Shown piece by piece: positions 3,133 to 51,875 of a stretch of DNA of 64,000 nt. Both the position numbers and the translations under genes were made by a program. Location: the sequence record NC_042116.1. One strand, given 5' to 3'. Numbering within the stretch: position 1 is the stretch's first letter; each line of letters opens with the position of its first letter. The notes below the pieces were generated by a model. It was given only the letters and a program-made list of their open reading frames with translations. It was not told the origin of the DNA and made no database searches.

Positions 3133-4269
3133 ATGAAAGGCAAATATTTTTTCAAAGATGAAAATGGTTTTCCAGTCGAGATTCAAGAATTTGATTATGA
3201 ATATGTTCGTAATTCTTTACTAAAGGTATTTGATAAAAATATCGCGAAGAAATATATCTTTAATGTTATCGTTAATCGCAACCATGATTCTCTTGGATTG
3301 CCAGTTTTTGATGTTCGTCCATTGAATTTAAATGATATCTATTATGATAGTACTCGACTTCGTGTACTAGAAATGATGTTAGATGATATATATTTTGGTC
3401 GCATTTCAATTAAAGAATTACCAGTTCCTAAATTGCAGCATGAATACCAAGAATATTTAGAGGGACGTGCTAAACCAGCTCCAGTTCCTGCAATTCCAGA
3501 TGTTCCTGCACCTATTGTTTTTACACGAGTTGAAATTAGTGAAAATGATGAACGTATTATGCAACTAGGAACAGTAGAATCCAATGTTCCAATTGTTCCA
3601 ATGAAAGTACTAGACTGGATTGACAACTTTGAAGTATGTAGTCAAGAAATGACTGTTAATACACAAAAGTTATCAGAAGAACAAATCCGTTTAGTTCAAG
3701 TGTTGAAAACTAACAGTGATTACATTCATAGTGTATTCTCTAATTTAACTTCAGTACTTGAGGCAATGTTCCCATTAAAGCCATCATTCACACAACGGTT
3801 ATTTGGAACTACTAAAGATATCGAAGTTAAACAGGATGATTTAGGAACTATTTTAAACACACTACGCAGTGCAGTATCAGTTGACCCAAATCGGTTTAGT
3901 GGTATAGGGGAAGTGTTTAAAAATATTCAAAATAGTATTCAAGAAATAAAAAATACGGTTGAACAAGGTGTTATTGGATGTAAGTTTGTAATTCAAACCA
4001 CTGAAGATGCGTATGAATTTGAATTGCGTCAAGAACGTTTGATGAAAATTCGGGCAACTACTGAAATTTCAGAACTGTCACTTGTAAGTATCAATAAAAA
4101 GTTTCTATCTGATTTAAATAAGTTAAAAGAAGTGCAAGAAGTTGTAGTTCCTTTACTTATTATCAAGTTACAAAATCAAGCAACTAAAAAAGTTGATGAT
4201 GAAACAGTTAATATCATTCGTAATTTGGCATATAGTCGTGATTCCGAAAAAAGTTCAGACCAAAAATAA
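3133..4269 (+). CDS. coiled-coil protein, C-terminal half TelA-like (possible TelA partner)
   Basis: 378 aa; helical C-terminus with 'SFTQRLFG' resembles TelA 'SRVWNIFG'; adjacent to telA. Confidence 0.6.
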   Translation: MKGKYFFKDENGFPVEIQEFDYEYVRNSLLKVFDKNIAKKYIFNVIVNRNHDSLGLPVFDVRPLNLNDIYYDSTRLRVLEMMLDDIYFGRISIKELPVPKLQHEYQEYLEGRAKPAPVPAIPDVPAPIVFTRVEISENDERIMQLGTVESNVPIVPMKVLDWIDNFEVCSQEMTVNTQKLSEEQIRLVQVLKTNSDYIHSVFSNLTSVLEAMFPLKPSFTQRLFGTTKDIEVKQDDLGTILNTLRSAVSVDPNRFSGIGEVFKNIQNSIQEIKNTVEQGVIGCKFVIQTTEDAYEFELRQERLMKIRATTEISELSLVSINKKFLSDLNKLKEVQEVVVPLLIIKLQNQATKKVDDETVNIIRNLAYSRDSEKSSDQK

Positions 4270-6636: not shown

Positions 6637-7731
6637 ATGGATTTTGTAATAATTGCATTACCCGCATTATTAACATGTATAGTCATGAAGTTTATTTTTA
6701 AACATGACATCACAATGAAAGAATTTTTCATTCATTGTGGTGCTACTATTGCTGTTATTGGGATAATGATGGCTATTACATATGCAAGTATGTATGCATC
6801 AATGGCAGACAATGAAATTTTAAATGGTAAAGTACTTTCAAAATCAAGGGAAGTAGAAATTTGTACCCAATACAGTTCATGTAAACATTATCATTGGCGT
6901 GAAAAATGCAATTATTACACCGATAGTAAAGGTAAACGTCAAAAATCGTGTGAATCATATAAAGTTTTTGATTATAGTTATGAAGTGGATTGGTATGTCA
7001 AAACTACAGTGGATAGTCATGAAATAGAACGTGTAAACCGTCAAGGTACTTCTATACCACCACGGTGGGAAATCGTAAAAATTGGAGATCCTGCAAGTAC
7101 TACTCATATGTATATAAATTACTTGTTAGGTAATGAAGATTCATTATTTTATCAGGAACAATACAAAAAAGATTTCACTGAAGAATATAAAAAGACTTTA
7201 CCAGATTATCCAAAAATTTATGATTATTATCGTATAAATCATGTTATTAATTTAACAAAAATTGATAGTACTGGTTTTAACGATTATATTAACAATGTTT
7301 TACGTGATATGGGTGCATTACAACAAGTGAACCTTGTTATTGTTATGTATCAATACGAAAATAAAAAGTTTGTTGAAGGTATAACAGCAAAATGGCGTGG
7401 TGGAAAAAAGAATGATGTTATCATGTTTTTTGGATTAGATGGTACTGGTATAGTACGTAATTTTAGCAGTACTTCATTTGGTAAAGGTATGAAAAATGAA
7501 TATTTGCATAGTAAATTACGAATGACTGCCCTTACTGAGAATATATCACTTGACTTAGTGCAAAAAACTGTGTATGATGTACAACAGAATTTCAAACGAC
7601 TTCCAAATGCGGAATTTGAATATTTGAAATATAAACTTGAACCTAGTCGTTGGGTTGTGATATTATGTTCACTCTTAGCATTAGGTATCTCAATTGGTAT
7701 TGGTATGTACATGAGGAAGTTAGATTTATGA
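6637..7731 (+). CDS. membrane protein (2 N-terminal + 1 C-terminal TM, periplasmic Cys-rich domain)
   Basis: hydrophobic segments at both ends; ATG 6637 with AGGTG RBS. Confidence 0.75.
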   Translation: MDFVIIALPALLTCIVMKFIFKHDITMKEFFIHCGATIAVIGIMMAITYASMYASMADNEILNGKVLSKSREVEICTQYSSCKHYHWREKCNYYTDSKGKRQKSCESYKVFDYSYEVDWYVKTTVDSHEIERVNRQGTSIPPRWEIVKIGDPASTTHMYINYLLGNEDSLFYQEQYKKDFTEEYKKTLPDYPKIYDYYRINHVINLTKIDSTGFNDYINNVLRDMGALQQVNLVIVMYQYENKKFVEGITAKWRGGKKNDVIMFFGLDGTGIVRNFSSTSFGKGMKNEYLHSKLRMTALTENISLDLVQKTVYDVQQNFKRLPNAEFEYLKYKLEPSRWVVILCSLLALGISIGIGMYMRKLDL

Positions 7732-22861: not shown

Positions 22862-23590
22862 ATGGAATGTAAAAATTGTAATAAAGATATTTTAAATAAA
22901 AGAAACAAATTTTGTTCTAAATCTTGTTCAGCATCCTATAATAATAAAAATAGGACAATGACCGAAACCTCCAAAATTAAAATCTCCGAAAAACTATCAG
23001 CAAAATATGATTTAGAAATAGTTAAATCGTTAGCTGAAAACGGAACAAATATATTGGAAATAGCTAAATGTTTGGGTGTATGTAAAAATACCGCTAGGCG
23101 TATATTAAGTAATAATAATATTAAAATTATTAAAAAGAAAAAACCTATTAATAAAAGTCCAAGTAAGAGTTTAAAGAAAAATCCACAATTTATTAAAAAA
23201 GAATCAAAATTTCTAATAGATGGTGGTATAACTTGTTCAAAACATAATATAAAATATATTTTTAATGAAAAAAAGAAAATATATGAATGTAAAGGCTGTA
23301 ATGTTGAGTATGTAAATAATCATAGACGAAAAAAGAAGCAAATGACTGTTGATTATAAAGGTGGAAAATGTCAAGTTTGTGGATATAATAAATGTTTAGC
23401 AGCATTAGATTTTCACCATATAAATCCATTAGAAAAAGATTTTAATATTTCAACTAAATTTATTTCATTCGAAAAAATGAAATCAGAACTTGACAAGTGT
23501 ATATTATTGTGTTCTAATTGTCATCGTGAATTTCATGATGGTAAATTAGACTTAACTAAAATAATTGGTAGATTGCCTGAGTCGGATTAA
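22862..23590 (+). CDS. HNH homing endonuclease with N-terminal Zn motif and HTH
   Basis: CKNC..FCSKSC; 'YKGGKCQVCG..LDFHH..CILLCSNCHREFH'; stop overlaps tRNA-Ser. Confidence 0.85.
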   Translation: MECKNCNKDILNKRNKFCSKSCSASYNNKNRTMTETSKIKISEKLSAKYDLEIVKSLAENGTNILEIAKCLGVCKNTARRILSNNNIKIIKKKKPINKSPSKSLKKNPQFIKKESKFLIDGGITCSKHNIKYIFNEKKKIYECKGCNVEYVNNHRRKKKQMTVDYKGGKCQVCGYNKCLAALDFHHINPLEKDFNISTKFISFEKMKSELDKCILLCSNCHREFHDGKLDLTKIIGRLPESD

Positions 23591-36019: not shown

Positions 36020-36092
36020 AAAGGTACACACTATTATACCCATGTATTACAGTGCTTTCTATAAATAATATAAAGTTATTATGGAGAGTACT

Positions 36093-36563
36093 ATGAGAAA
36101 AGATATTCTAGAAAGTAGAGAGTTGATTGAAAAACTGATAAGTGAAAATCAACCAAAGACGGAAATCGCAAGACAACTAAATTGTAAGATTGACACATTA
36201 AATTTGTATCTTAAAAAGATGGAAATTGTGTATAATGGTAACATGGGTGGTAAGGGTATTAAAACTCAACCTAGACAATATGTTACTGCTATGGAATATA
36301 TTGAACGCGGCAAACAAGGTCAATATGTTAAATCACACAAACTACGTCTTAAATTAATTAAAGATGGAATCAAAAAAGAAAAGTGTGAAATATGTGGTAA
36401 TCATGAATGGAATGGTAAAACTATACCATTAGAATTAGATCATATTGATGGTGACCATTATAATAACAATTTAGAAAATCTCCGTATTATATGTCCTAAT
36501 TGCCATGCACAAACTGATACACATGCTGGTAAAAATGTTGGTAAAAATATGAAACAGAAATAA
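36093..36563 (+). CDS. HNH homing endonuclease
   Basis: 'CEICG...LELDHIDGD..NN..ENLRIICPNCH'; TATAAATA at 36060, GGAG RBS before ATG 36093. Confidence 0.85.
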   Translation: MRKDILESRELIEKLISENQPKTEIARQLNCKIDTLNLYLKKMEIVYNGNMGGKGIKTQPRQYVTAMEYIERGKQGQYVKSHKLRLKLIKDGIKKEKCEICGNHEWNGKTIPLELDHIDGDHYNNNLENLRIICPNCHAQTDTHAGKNVGKNMKQK

Positions 36564-39635: not shown

Positions 39636-39788
39636 GGAATTGTAATGATTACTAATGAATGTATTGAATCCAAAACATTTGATGATAACGTTCGTAACAC
39701 ATTAAATGATGAAATGGAATTATTGCGTATAAACACTATTGATGGATTACATGATGCTGTTAATAAATTAAAATAATAAAAGAATACC

Positions 39789-40030
39789 GCATGTATTAGG
39801 ATGTTGGCCTAACAGTAGCCATCATTTAAAGAGTATCGAGAACGATCCGTCTAGTGAAGAAGCCACGAAAGTAACTAGCGTATAAGTTCAGGGGGAAGAT
39901 TCTGAAAATAGTACTGATATGTTTCATGGGCCAGTATGGAATTAAGTATTCAATTAGCGGTGGCGTTGATTTTATATAATGTCAGTACTTACCCTTAGAG
40001 ATTTTGGTGTAATAACACACTACTACATGC
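39789..40030 (+). ncRNA. 23S rRNA L11-binding (GTPase-associated centre) mimic with ~170-nt insertion
   Basis: AGGATGTTGGCCTAACAGTAGCCATCATTTAAAGAGT ... GTGTAATAACACAC closed by GCATGTA/TACATGC; matches E. coli 23S ~1051-1108 as recalled. Confidence 0.75.
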
Positions 40031-40054
40031 ATTTTAATTAAATGAGGATACCTT

Positions 40055-40528
40055 ATGTTTGAATTTGACAGTATTCAAGATTTTGTTTGTAAATCTTTAA
40101 TAGGAAAAGTACTTGTTAAGGTTGATGATGTTGAACTTTTAGAAACTATAGTTCGTGCTCATCATGATTCTAGTACTAATTCTATTATTGTAGAATCAGA
40201 AACATCACAAATATATATCTATAATAGTTCTTTTGTGATAGTTGATAACTTGGTTGAAGTAGATTGGGGAAACTATAGTTTACAAGTAGAACCTAAATTT
40301 GGTATTTCAAGTTGGTTATCCAAATCTGAAAAAAATGAAGATTATGGAGATGTATTCAGTACTGACGAATTCTTTGAACATGTTGAATCTGGTATGTTCA
40401 TCGATTCAGATGGACATGGATATCCAAGTAATGGAACTCATCATATTTTCACCTGTTTGTCAGTACGTGATCTTGCAGCATGTAAATATAGTAAAACTGT
40501 ATCTCACATCATATGGTATAATAAATGA
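40055..40528 (+). CDS. hypothetical protein
   Basis: 157 aa, 'F.D.DG.GY', 'WYNK'. Confidence 0.7.
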   Translation: MFEFDSIQDFVCKSLIGKVLVKVDDVELLETIVRAHHDSSTNSIIVESETSQIYIYNSSFVIVDNLVEVDWGNYSLQVEPKFGISSWLSKSEKNEDYGDVFSTDEFFEHVESGMFIDSDGHGYPSNGTHHIFTCLSVRDLAACKYSKTVSHIIWYNK

Positions 40529-51754: not shown

Positions 51755-51875
51755 GGCGAGTTAGCTCAGAGGTAGAGCACGTAGAAACCAAGGATTCTAG
51801 TACTAGATTCCCGCAGCAACAATAACTCATACTATGATAAAGTCGTGGTCGGGGGTTCAAATCCCTCACTCGCCG
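51755..51875 (+). ncRNA. tRNA interrupted by GCAGCA module (Ile-type loop ATGATAA)
   Basis: GGCGAGT/ACTCGCC, D arm GCTCAGAGGTAGAGC, insert GGATTCTAG-ta-CTAGATTCC-c-GCAGCA, ACT-ATGATAA-AGT stem-loop. Confidence 0.75.

What the first reader, a model, noticed from the sequence alone, without database searches (positions are those of the whole stretch)
39789..40030. Phage RNA mimicking the 23S rRNA GTPase-associated (L11/thiostrepton) centre
Seen: AGGATGTTGGCCTAACAGTAGCCATCATTTAAAGAGT (from 39798) and GTGTAATAACACAC (40007-40020), closed by GCATGTA/TACATGC, in an ORF-free gap. Established (sequence recalled): E. coli 23S ~1051-1108 is GCCAGGAUGUUGGCUUAGAAGCAGCCAUCAUUUAAAGAAAGCGUAAUAGCUCACUGGU. 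The phage copy differs at 4 of the first 35 nt and keeps A1067 and A1095. It also shows compensatory changes in H44 (C1092-G1099 to U-A; A1090-U1101 to U-A), which points to structural selection. A 172-nt structured insertion (39835-40006, e.g. AGTACTGATAT/ATGTCAGTACT helix) interrupts H44. Inference: a decoy or scaffold for uL11/uL10, translational GTPases or RelA, or a sink for rRNA-targeting toxins.
Basis: partly seen in the sequence, partly recalled or inferred. Interest (0 to 1): 0.88.

Follow-up and report, generated by a model that had tools for sequence, protein, structure and literature searches.

The report
Phage RNA copying ribosome's GTPase centre
A 242-base non-coding RNA gene of a giant Yersinia phage folds like the part of 23S ribosomal RNA that binds protein uL11 and docks translation factors. 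It belongs to a large, apparently undescribed family of such RNAs that sit among the tRNA genes of big phages.

Summary
Window 39789-40030 (+ strand; Yersinia phage fHe-Yen9-04, between g404 and g405) holds the two halves of the 23S rRNA GTPase-associated centre (GAC, H42 top/H43/H44), split by a 168-nt helix-closed insert and closed by an 11-position stem.

It is not an isolated oddity. Pattern scans found about 125 distinct relatives in phage genomes and viral or metagenome contigs, with inserts of 37-400 nt at the same spot.

Across them the H43, H44, 1082:1086 and closing-stem pairs covary. The U1060·U1078 mismatch and the A1088 partner U1060 are kept. The non-Watson-Crick base triple 1072·(1092-1099) switches in concert (C·C-G or U·U-A/G) in 124 of 125 sequences, so the two halves assemble into a genuine GAC tertiary fold.

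The elements lie in tRNA/tmRNA arrays on the tRNA strand, carry no other 23S similarity and have no conserved protein neighbour. Long forms, but not the window's, also carry a sarcin-ricin-loop-like hairpin.

No Rfam family or paper was found that describes them. The most likely mechanism, which is inferred, is a stable trans-acting mimic that binds host uL11 or another GAC ligand. Toxin decoy and GTPase decoy remain live rivals. No binding has been shown.

The parts
39746..39774 (+). Sigma-70-like promoter match (ATTACA-17-TAAAAT) ending 14 nt before the RNA. Weak evidence only.
   Evidence: a 9/12 match, but the number of such sites in the region is not above the shuffles. Relatives have clearer signals: RSP15 has TTGACA-17-TATAAT and XaC1 has a terminator just upstream.
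39789..39799 (+). P1 5' strand (GCATGTATTAG), the H42-top-like closing stem. G39799 corresponds to G1055.
   Evidence: It pairs with 40020-40030, with 10 of 11 positions paired. In the family, 11 of 12 P1 pairs show compensatory changes.
39801..39825 (+). H43-like hairpin (A1057-U1081). The loop is 39809-39817 (CUAACAGUA), with A1067 = 39811 and U1072 = 39816.
   Evidence: 30/34 identical to E. coli 23S and matched by the Rfam LSU alignment. Pairs 1057:81, 1058:80, 1059:79, 1062:76, 1063:75 and 1064:74 are 99-100% paired with compensatory changes. U1060·U1078 and A1077 are kept, and 1061 is free.
39826..39834 (+). UUAAA (the 1082:1086 closing pair), then G1087 A1088 G U (1087-1090 of the bacterial consensus 'GAgu').
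   Evidence: 1082:1086 is U-A, A-U or C-G and is paired in 77/77 sequences. G1087-C1102 is invariant. A1088 and its tertiary partner U1060 are invariant. GAGU aligns to the 'GAgu' of the Rfam model.
39835..39837 (+). P-ins 5' strand (AUC), the 3-bp helix that closes the insert.
   Evidence: It pairs with 40000-40002 (GAU). In the family all three positions are paired in 93/93 sequences, with 12 different strand combinations.
39838..39889 (+). Junction GA, then arm A. P-a is GAAC 39840-39843 paired with GUUC 39886-39889. The internal loop is GAUC / UAUAA. The hairpin is CUAGU 39851-39855 paired with ACUAG 39874-39878.
   Evidence: P-a and the adjoining P-b are perfect (8/8 pairs) in 90/93 sequences, against 8/93 after shuffling. 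About 20 P-a strand combinations occur, and all 4 P-a pairs show compensatory changes. The hairpin stem covaries among Rak2-like phages.
39890..39995 (+). Arm B. P-b is AGGG 39890-39893 paired with CCCU 39992-39995. It encloses a purine-rich strand and a long branched hairpin (AGUACUGAUAU 39910-39920 paired with AUGUCAGUACU 39979-39989).
   Evidence: P-b covaries AGGG/CCCU, AGGA/UCCU, AGAG/CUCU, GGGC/GCCU. (the long hairpin is predicted and covaries within the subfamily).
39996..40006 (+). Junction UAGA, the P-ins 3' strand GAU (40000-40002), then the linker UUUG.
   Evidence: UAGAG and UUUGG were fixed by the first search pattern. UUU(G/A)G recurs in the scan that left the 3' half free.
40007..40019 (+). 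H44-like hairpin G1091-C1100 (GUGUAAUAAC; loop GUAAUA, A1095 = 40011), then A1101, C1102 and A1103.
   Evidence: 1092:1099 is U-A here. In the family it is C-G, U-A or U-G and always paired. It is linked to base 1072 in 124/125 sequences. The loop GUAAYA is kept even when not imposed by the search.
40020..40030 (+). P1 3' strand (CUACUACAUGC). C40020 corresponds to C1104. It is followed by AUUUUAAUU.
   Evidence: A U-rich tail after P1 is shared by the Rak2-like relatives.

Best explanation
Window 39789-40030 (+) is the gene for a stable, trans-acting non-coding RNA of about 242 nt.

Its constant part reproduces the uL11-binding, factor-docking domain of 23S rRNA. This comprises the top of H42, H43, the 1082-1086 turn, G1087/A1088 and H44, folded into the same tertiary structure. 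A variable three-way-junction domain buds out between position 1090 and G1091.

It is one member of a large family carried in the tRNA/tmRNA gene arrays of large phages.

What is shown: the sequence, the secondary structure, the tertiary covariation, the strand, the genomic context, and the fact that the RNA stands alone.

What is inferred: the RNA is made and processed together with the phage tRNAs. In the infected cell it binds a ligand of the ribosomal GAC, most probably free or exchanging host uL11. The nucleotides uL11 contacts are the most strictly kept, and the carrier phages checked encode no uL11 of their own. The RNA would then act as a decoy or scaffold that changes how the host's translation apparatus, or its stress and defence signalling, sees the GTPase centre.
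For: Identity and significance:
- The strings and coordinates are as described.
- blastn gives 30/34 identity to 23S, E = 1e-5, and the Rfam LSU model gives a local hit.

A family, not a one-off:
- Homologous intergenic elements occur in Serratia BF, the Erwinia pEa phages, CBB, GAP32, Xanthomonas XaC1 and Ralstonia RSP15.
- Acinetobacter ME3, Pseudomonas Astolliot and pf16, and the Lak megaphages also carry them.
- There are 96 unique elements from 3'-motif scans and 49 more from a scan that left the 3' half free.

Structure, on a 48-sequence core alignment:
- 92% of cells are paired, against 68.6% in shuffles and at most 51% in slid controls.
- 25 of 34 pairs have compensatory changes.
- The covariation score is 0.612 against 0.165, reached by 0 of 500 shuffles.

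GAC-specific idiosyncrasies are kept:
- U1060·U1078, A1077, a free 1061, the 1082:1086 pair and G1087-C1102.
- The base triple 1072·(1092-1099) is concordant in 124/125 sequences and gives the second-highest mutual information of all column pairs. Fisher p is 2e-18 and 3e-12 in the two sets, and the pattern holds across 38 unrelated insert clusters.
- L010 and L144 have inserts that are 176/178 identical, yet both GAC halves are switched in concert.

uL11:
- uL11 hydrogen-bonds to the U1060-A1088 pair (PMC2175356). U1060 is invariant although left free by both patterns; A1088 is invariant too but was specified in them.
- No uL11 homologue is found in any carrier phage.

Stable-RNA context:
- 65 of 93 elements have a tRNA within 2 kb, and 224 of 224 of those tRNAs are on the same strand.
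- 67 of 85 further loci carry tRNAs, with no other 23S similarity in 806 kb.
- tmRNA genes lie next to some elements.
- The window itself is a +-strand tRNA region.
Against: - No expression data and no binding data exist.
- The insert leaves the chain next to A1088, close to where uL11 sits. It could clash with uL11, or could even replace it as the stabiliser of the fold.
- A1067, universal in rRNA by established knowledge, is A or G in the family. The tip also varies at 1068-1070 and 1096-1097, so the RNA is not a full functional copy of the factor site.
- Conservation of the uL11-contact bases cannot be separated from conservation needed for the fold itself.
- Several 3'-half positions are invariant only because the search patterns fixed them.
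- The sarcin-ricin-like hairpin of the long forms points to partners other than uL11.
Confidence: 0.55

Rival explanations
1. Decoy for enzymes that attack the ribosomal GTPase centre. The RNA would present H43/H44 (and, in long forms, a sarcin-ricin-like loop) as a bait. The bait would soak up ribosome-inactivating toxins or abortive-infection effectors such as ADP-ribosyltransferases or site-specific RNases. This would parallel phage tRNA genes that replace tRNAs cut by host defence nucleases.
For: A bacterial toxin, Tre23, ADP-ribosylates 23S at 1095-1098 in H44, and other toxins cut or depurinate the SRL (PMC8661411). The H44 loop GUAAYA and A1095 are kept even where the search did not impose them. 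41 of 93 elements add an SRL-like hairpin, AGUAC-GNRA-GGA(A/G), with covarying flanking stems. The element sits with the tRNA genes.
Against: No defence system that targets the GAC during phage infection is known to me, and none was found in the searches. The window's RNA has no SRL-like hairpin. Such toxins may require the whole ribosome. Tip positions 1067-1070 vary.
Confidence: 0.15
2. Miniature factor-binding site. The RNA, with or without uL11, would capture or activate translational GTPases (EF-G, EF-Tu, IF2, RF3, BipA, LepA, HflX) or RelA away from the ribosome. That would alter elongation, the stringent response or GTP use.
For: GAC and SRL together form the factor-docking site (PMC8661411). 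Long family members contain both motifs in one RNA. A1095 is largely kept.
Against: A1067 is freely A or G. The window's RNA and all forms shorter than 330 nt lack the SRL-like hairpin. The bulged-G/GNRA hairpin is a common structural module, so a 12-nt identity to the SRL is partly forced by the motif. The geometry between the two motifs is unknown.
Confidence: 0.15
3. The GAC fold is reused only as a compact, self-folding structural module of an RNA whose function lies in the variable arms or elsewhere, for example binding a phage protein, a tRNA or a small molecule. The inserted helix would take the place of uL11 in stabilising the fold.
For: The insert always emerges next to A1088, near the uL11 site. 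The linker bases GU and UUUG are invariant. The arms carry conserved motifs of their own: CGUAUAA, GAAGRACAAG and GGGCGAAGCC.
Against: The arms are the variable part, from 37 to 400 nt and in at least two unrelated classes, while the GAC module is the constant. The shortest members are little more than the GAC plus one hairpin. No other natural RNA is known to me to reuse this domain.
Confidence: 0.1
4. Cis-acting element of the flanking genes: an r-protein-style leader that controls g405, or a terminator for g404.
For: P1 is followed by a U-rich tail, and g405 starts 25 nt downstream.
Against: The flanking genes differ between relatives, and the next gene is often a tRNA. No protein family is shared by more than 3 of 47 insert clusters. 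The neighbours have no Pfam match, and PHROGs matches only families of unknown function. No terminator-like site was found.
Confidence: 0.03
5. Non-functional scrap of host rRNA captured by the phage, or an assembly artefact.
For: Some 'phage' database records do contain true, contiguous host 23S (Paenibacillus phage Pd_22F and short records).
Against: The window is identical in three database records of the same phage (one of them RefSeq) and 99% identical in a sister phage. About 125 diverged relatives keep the structure through compensatory changes. The same split is always present. Half of the family carries the U·U-A triple, which is unlike the bacterial consensus.
Confidence: 0.02

Closest known systems
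23S rRNA GTPase-associated centre (the L11/thiostrepton domain, nt 1051-1108, H42-H44)
   Same: The same helices, the same non-canonical features (U1060·U1078, the 1082:1086 pair, G1087-C1102, A1088) and the same 1072·(1092-1099) triple covariation. H43 is 88-94% identical in sequence.
   Different: It stands alone at 110-440 nt rather than lying inside a 2.9-kb rRNA. It always carries an extra helix-closed domain between 1090 and 1091. H42 is replaced by a plain stem. A1067 and the neighbouring tip bases are not fixed. It is encoded by phages among tRNA genes.
Ribosomal-protein autoregulatory leaders that mimic rRNA sites (for example the L10, L1, L20 and S15 leaders; Meyer 2018, cited in PMC7247131)
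   Same: An RNA outside the ribosome that copies the rRNA binding site of a ribosomal protein.
   Different: Those leaders are cis-acting 5' UTRs of r-protein operons and copy only a few contact bases. This one is a separate gene, is not next to any r-protein gene, copies a whole domain including its tertiary structure, and is viral. I know of no leader that mimics the uL11 site.
Phage-encoded tRNAs and tmRNA, and the T4 stable RNAs C and D of unknown function (from memory)
   Same: Small stable RNAs encoded in the tRNA clusters of large phages, on the same strand, related to translation.
   Different: A different fold with no tRNA-like part. It mimics rRNA rather than a tRNA.
Large ornate phage- and prophage-associated RNAs GOLLD and ROOL (Rfam; bioRxiv 10.1101/2024.12.08.627333)
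   Same: Structured non-coding RNAs of unknown function often found near tRNA genes in phages.
   Different: No sequence or model match at Rfam E up to 10. Those RNAs have no rRNA-like domain.
Protein-sequestering mimic RNAs (6S RNA, CsrB, bacterial Y RNAs)
   Same: The proposed logic: an RNA imitates the natural nucleic-acid ligand of a protein and titrates or redirects it.
   Different: The targets and folds are different. Binding is demonstrated for those RNAs and only inferred here.

Membership tests
GAC fold of 23S rRNA (nt 1051-1108) | H43 helix with canonical pairs 1057:81, 1058:80, 1059:79, 1062:76, 1063:75 and 1064:74, interrupted by U1060·U1078 and a non-pairing 1061/A1077 | tested here: met
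   99-100% paired, with compensatory changes at 4 of the pairs. U1060 is invariant in 77/77 and 49/49 sequences. 1061 is A, U or G opposite an invariant A1077.
GAC fold of 23S rRNA (nt 1051-1108) | H44 hairpin G1091-C1100 / 1092-1099 with a GUAAUA-type hexaloop carrying A1095 | tested here: met
   Window 40007-40016. 1092:1099 is always paired, as C-G, U-A or U-G. In the scan that left this half free the loop is still GUAAYA, with A1095 in 44/49.
GAC fold of 23S rRNA (nt 1051-1108) | Tertiary base triple 1072·(1092-1099) that covaries C·C-G with U·U-A (Conn, Gutell and Draper 1998, from memory) | tested here: met
   124/125 sequences are concordant. This holds across 38 insert clusters. The one exception in the first set, L103, looks chimeric.
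GAC fold of 23S rRNA (nt 1051-1108) | 1082:1086 pair, G1087-C1102 pair and the A1088-U1060 tertiary contact | tested here: met
   1082:1086 is paired in 77/77 with three pair types. G1087, A1088, C1102 and U1060 are invariant, but G1087, A1088 and C1102 were partly fixed by the search patterns.
GAC fold of 23S rRNA (nt 1051-1108) | Binding of uL11 and of thiostrepton | not testable with these tools
   This needs EMSA, ITC or filter binding with purified uL11 and the transcript.
Bacterial LSU rRNA gene or fragment (Rfam RF02541) | A score at or above gathering, contiguity of H44 with H43, and surrounding 23S sequence | tested here: not met
   14.7 bits against a gathering score of 50. There is a 168-nt insert between 1090 and 1091. 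No other 23S similarity is found in the element or in 806 kb of related loci.
Functional factor-binding tip of the ribosome | Universally conserved A1067 and the H43 loop UUAGAAGCA | tested here: inconclusive
   The window has A1067 but differs at 1065, 1068, 1069 and 1072. In the family, 1067 is A 37 / G 39 and A 39 / G 9 / U 1.
Ribosomal-protein leader (cis-regulatory rRNA mimic) | Lies in the 5' UTR of an r-protein gene whose product it binds | tested here: not met
   The neighbours are hypothetical phage genes or tRNAs. No uL11 gene is found in any carrier phage.
Sarcin-ricin loop mimic | Bulged-G motif AGUA/GAA with a GAGA tetraloop in a hairpin | tested here: not met
   None is found in the window at up to 1 mismatch. 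It is present in 41/93 relatives, all of 330 nt or more.
Known Rfam families (group I/II introns, riboswitches, GOLLD, ROOL, tmRNA, tRNA) | A covariance-model match | tested here: not met
   cmscan of 39700-40120 at E up to 10 gives only the LSU fragment plus two chance hits. The same holds for L015.

The most novel reading that the evidence does not exclude
Large phages of many bacterial phyla encode miniature stand-alone replicas of the ribosome's translation-factor docking site. These replicas are the GAC alone in short forms, and the GAC plus a sarcin-ricin-like loop in long forms. They would act in trans during infection, either to strip or borrow host uL11 and translational GTPases, or to absorb ribosome-directed defence toxins. 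That would be an rRNA counterpart of phage tRNA genes and a new class of translation-takeover or anti-defence RNA.
Probability: 0.35. Interest if true: 0.95.

Novelty: categorically new. Interest (0 to 1): 0.88.

Why it matters
Phages are known to carry tRNAs, tmRNA and a few ribosomal proteins. A free-standing copy of a ribosomal RNA functional centre has not, to my knowledge or in the searched literature, been described.

It spans phages of Enterobacteria, Pseudomonas, Acinetobacter, Xanthomonas, Ralstonia, Prevotella and many uncultured hosts.

Its fold is tied down by tertiary covariation, so it offers a ready-made, naturally diversified set of GAC variants.

If it binds uL11 or translation factors, it reveals a new way for viruses to manipulate translation or the stringent response. 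If it is a toxin bait, it predicts undiscovered defence systems that attack the GTPase centre. Either way the hypothesis can be tested directly with simple binding and deletion experiments.

Tried and rejected
- **Rfam.** Gathering and E up to 10 scans found no family other than the LSU fragment.
- **Infernal's compact alignment.** It pairs the local UCGAGAACGAUC as H44. I rejected this because the distal GGYGUAAYARCACAC half covaries with H43.
- **RNAalifold on six close relatives.** It put the insert-closing helix in a register using AGAGU/ACUUU. I rejected this because G of GAGU would face A in most family members. The N1N2C/GN2'N1' register is paired in 93/93 sequences.
- **Other rRNA pieces in the insert.** blastn-short against E. 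coli 23S found nothing significant in the window's insert. Only the 13-nt SRL identity in long forms turned up.
- **SRL-like or second GAC-like copies in the window.** None were found.
- **A co-conserved protein partner within 5 kb.** Only mobile HNH endonucleases recur. Pfam and PHROGs are uninformative on the neighbours.
- **uL11 genes in carrier phages.** None were found.
- **A 5'-motif scan with many Ns.** It gave mostly chance coding hits, apart from one H43-less variant, L051.
- **A class II insert-motif scan.** It found only two loci.
- **Literature.** Nine searches found no description of such an RNA. I could not retrieve the original base-triple paper, so that point rests on memory.

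Full report
**Where the window comes from.** The window is bases 248001-312000 of Yersinia phage fHe-Yen9-04, a 354-kb Eneladusvirus of the Rak2-like jumbo phages. The match is 100% in three database records of that phage (one of them RefSeq) and 99% in sister phage fHe-Yen9-03. The finding lies in the 278-nt gap between g404 (39645-39776) and g405 (40055-40528). Both are hypothetical genes on the + strand. The region is a long +-strand array of small ORFs and 16-17 tRNA genes.

**Checking the observation.** I fetched a real E. coli 23S gene (L055).
- The window element is 30/34 identical to 23S 1056-1089, with E = 1e-5 against one 23S gene.
- The Rfam bacterial LSU model aligns its GAC positions to 39795-39855 (14.7 bits, E = 0.019 for that small search).
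- Nothing else in Rfam matches at E up to 10.

**Relatives.** blastn found the same kind of intergenic element in these phages:
- Serratia phage BF
- six Erwinia pEa_SNUABM phages
- Pectobacterium CBB
- Cronobacter GAP32
- Xanthomonas XaC1
- Ralstonia RSP15, a 168-kb phage annotated as Ackermannviridae

In each one, an H43-like 5' half and an H44-like 3' half flank a variable middle, and the whole is closed by a stem of unrelated sequence.

A 3'-half pattern scan gave 39 IMG/VR loci, 5 contigs binned into MAGs and 106 metagenome stretches. From these, 125 loci had both halves and 96 were unique, spanning 188-419 nt.

That pattern fixes many H44 positions, so I ran a second scan with only a 5'-half pattern. 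It gave 88 new loci, of which none was contiguous rRNA and at least 61 were split, with inserts of 37-353 nt.

Those loci carry no other 23S similarity in 806 kb, and 67 of 85 hold tRNA genes.

A further search added Acinetobacter ME3, Pseudomonas Astolliot and pf16, and the Prevotella Lak megaphages.

**Secondary structure.** On a 48-sequence core alignment I counted the structure I derived:

| Measure | Observed | Shuffled control | Slid control |
|---|---|---|---|
| Cells paired | 92% | 68.6% | at most 51% |
| Covariation score | 0.612 | 0.165 (0 of 500 shuffles reach the observed value) | at most 0.155 |

25 of 34 pairs show changes on both sides. The helices are:
- P1, the H42-top-like stem. 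It has 8-12 pairs in the first 12 positions in nearly all sequences.
- H43.
- The 1082:1086 pair.
- G1087-C1102.
- H44.
- Three helices inside the insert.

The first insert helix is a 3-bp helix placed directly after GAGU and directly before UUUGG. It is paired in 93/93 sequences at all three positions, with 12 strand combinations. In the window this is AUC 39835-39837 with GAU 40000-40002.

It leads into a three-way junction:
- two purines (GA or AA);
- a 4-bp helix P-a, which abuts a 4-bp helix P-b (AGGG/CCCU);
- then UAGA.

P-a and P-b are perfect in 90/93 sequences, against 8/93 after shuffling. Note that their 3' and 5' strands were located by maximising pairing.

Aligned with the bacterial consensus 'GAgu' of the Rfam model, GAGU corresponds to 1087-1090. 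The insert therefore sits between 1090 and G1091.

**Tertiary structure.** The decisive result concerns base 1072 in the H43 loop and the pair 1092:1099 in H44. In the window they lie about 190 nt apart, and they change together. From memory of Conn, Gutell and Draper (1998), this is the known base triple of the GAC.

| Set | C·C-G | U·U-A | U·U-G | Exceptions |
|---|---|---|---|---|
| First set, 77 sequences | 22 | 34 | 20 | 1 |
| Second set, 49 sequences, 3' half left free | 31 | 16 | 1 | 1 |

- With the apparently chimeric contig L103 removed, 124 of 125 sequences are concordant. The 1072-1092 column pair has the second-highest mutual information in the domain, although it is never a Watson-Crick pair.
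- L103, the exception in the first set, also has a P1 that does not pair.
- The pattern holds across 38 clusters of unrelated inserts.
- L010 and L144 have inserts that are 176/178 identical. Yet six positions differ in the 5' half and three in the 3' half, including the 1072/1092/1099 and 1082/1086 switches.
- Other idiosyncrasies of the rRNA domain are also kept: the U1060·U1078 mismatch, invariant A1077 opposite a free 1061, and invariant U1060 and A1088.

The two halves therefore fold into the authentic GAC architecture.

**What is not like the ribosome.**
- A1067 is A in 37 and G in 39 of the first set, and A in 39 of 49 in the second.
- Positions 1068-1070, 1096 and 1097 also vary. In the Rfam consensus the whole H43 loop is conserved.
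- The lower part of H42, where uL10 binds by established knowledge, is absent.
- The insert is the variable part. It ranges from a single 37-nt hairpin to 400 nt.
- At least one other insert class exists, seen in pf16, the second Astolliot copy and L171.

**A second rRNA-like motif in long forms.** In 41 of 93 elements, all of 330 nt or more, the insert holds a hairpin reading (U)AGUAC-GNRA-GGA(A/G). Most often this is AGUACGAGAGGA, identical to the sarcin-ricin loop. Its flanking stems covary. The window's RNA has none. The bulged-G/GNRA hairpin is a common module, so part of this identity is forced by the motif.

**Context.**
- 65 of 93 elements have a tRNA or tmRNA within 2 kb, and 52 have one within 300 nt. 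All 224 such genes are on the element's strand.
- tmRNA genes lie near the element in L028, L089 and L154.
- RSP15 has a consensus TTGACA-17-TATAAT promoter just upstream. XaC1 and L041 have a terminator just upstream, and L041 then a TTGACT-17-TATCAT match. The window has only a weak promoter match at 39746-39774.
- No protein family recurs next to the RNA beyond mobile HNH endonucleases.
- The window's neighbours have no Pfam match, and PHROGs matches only families of unknown function.
- No carrier phage encodes a uL11 homologue.

**Interpretation.**
- Shown: a stand-alone, structurally constrained copy of the GAC fold with an extra domain, encoded on the tRNA strand of large phages.
- Inferred: it is a stable RNA that acts in trans by binding something that recognises the ribosomal GAC.

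I favour host uL11 at about 0.55, for three reasons:
- The 58-nt domain is its complete binding site (established knowledge).
- uL11 contacts the U1060-A1088 pair (PMC2175356). U1060 is invariant although left free by both patterns; A1088 is invariant too but was specified in them.
- The factor-contacting tip is relaxed.

Two points count against this. The insert emerges next to A1088 and might clash with uL11 or replace it. Fold constraints and uL11 constraints cannot be separated by sequence alone.

The live rivals are these:
- A bait for GAC/SRL-directed toxins. Such toxins exist: Tre23 modifies 1095-1098 (PMC8661411).
- A mini factor site for translational GTPases or RelA, suggested by the SRL-like hairpin of long forms.
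- A pure structural scaffold.

A cis-regulatory role and an rRNA scrap are effectively excluded.

**Novelty.** The RNA fails the tests for being rRNA, an r-protein leader or any Rfam family. Nine literature searches found no description. I rate it as a new class. The principle of RNA mimicry is familiar, and no function has been demonstrated.

Noticed in passing
window 44524-44599: A tRNA gene with anticodon CUA (ARAGORN labels it tRNA-Pyl). It is a candidate amber-suppressor tRNA in the phage's tRNA array.
   Followed up: no
window 49922-50035 and 51755-51875: Rfam tRNA matches of 114 and 121 nt (38.6 and 46.4 bits) that ARAGORN does not call. They may be tRNA genes with a long insertion or intron. 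Conversely, ARAGORN calls tRNAs at 23567 and 30996 that are absent from the Rfam list.
   Followed up: no
window 36081-36563: A 160-aa HNH homing-endonuclease ORF. Relatives recur near the RNA in unrelated phage contigs, probably only because both live in tRNA regions.
   Followed up: partly
L015 about 7140-7175, and 40 other loci (e.g. L079, L154, L082): Long family members (330 nt or more) carry a hairpin with the sarcin-ricin-loop sequence AGUACGAGAGGA and covarying flanking stems. One RNA thus holds look-alikes of both halves of the ribosomal factor-binding site.
   Followed up: partly
L168 (Pseudomonas phage Astolliot) 894-1203 and 1230-1394: Two split-GAC elements in tandem, followed by tRNA-Met. 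The first has the UAGAG-type junction (here CGUAGAG). The second has a different insert class (GAGU-GGGG...CCCC-UUUGG) shared with pf16 (L169 896-1074, between tRNA genes) and L171.
   Followed up: partly
L010 versus L144: The inserts are 176/178 identical, but the two GAC halves differ at 6 and 3 positions, including concerted switches at 1072/1092/1099 and 1082/1086. This reflects either modular exchange of the GAC or rapid compensated change.
   Followed up: yes
L167 (Prevotella phage Lak-A1) 900-1306: A diverged family member in a 540-kb megaphage. The H44-like hairpin is replaced by CCGAGAAAAGG and the SRL-like hairpin is degenerate. The pattern-based scans therefore under-sample the family.
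   Followed up: no
L051 about 3740-4090: A variant that keeps the insert and an altered H44 half (GGUUUAACAACACAC, CCCUCAGAG) but appears to lack the H43 hairpin. It may be a decayed copy.
   Followed up: no
L103: The exception to the base-triple rule in the first set. Its 5' half matches L084, its 3' end matches the L015 type, and its P1 does not pair. It is probably a chimeric metagenome contig.
   Followed up: partly
L170 (Paenibacillus phage Pd_22F, record 83077-84912): This 'phage' record contains true, contiguous 23S rRNA sequence (AAAGAGUGCGUAAUAGCUCACUGGUCGAG...). It is probably host DNA or contamination. Several short 'phage' records do the same.
   Followed up: no
L028 7552-7919; L089 8113-8459; L154 96-485: Phage-encoded tmRNA genes lie within 1-2 kb of the GAC-like RNA on the same strand.
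   Followed up: no
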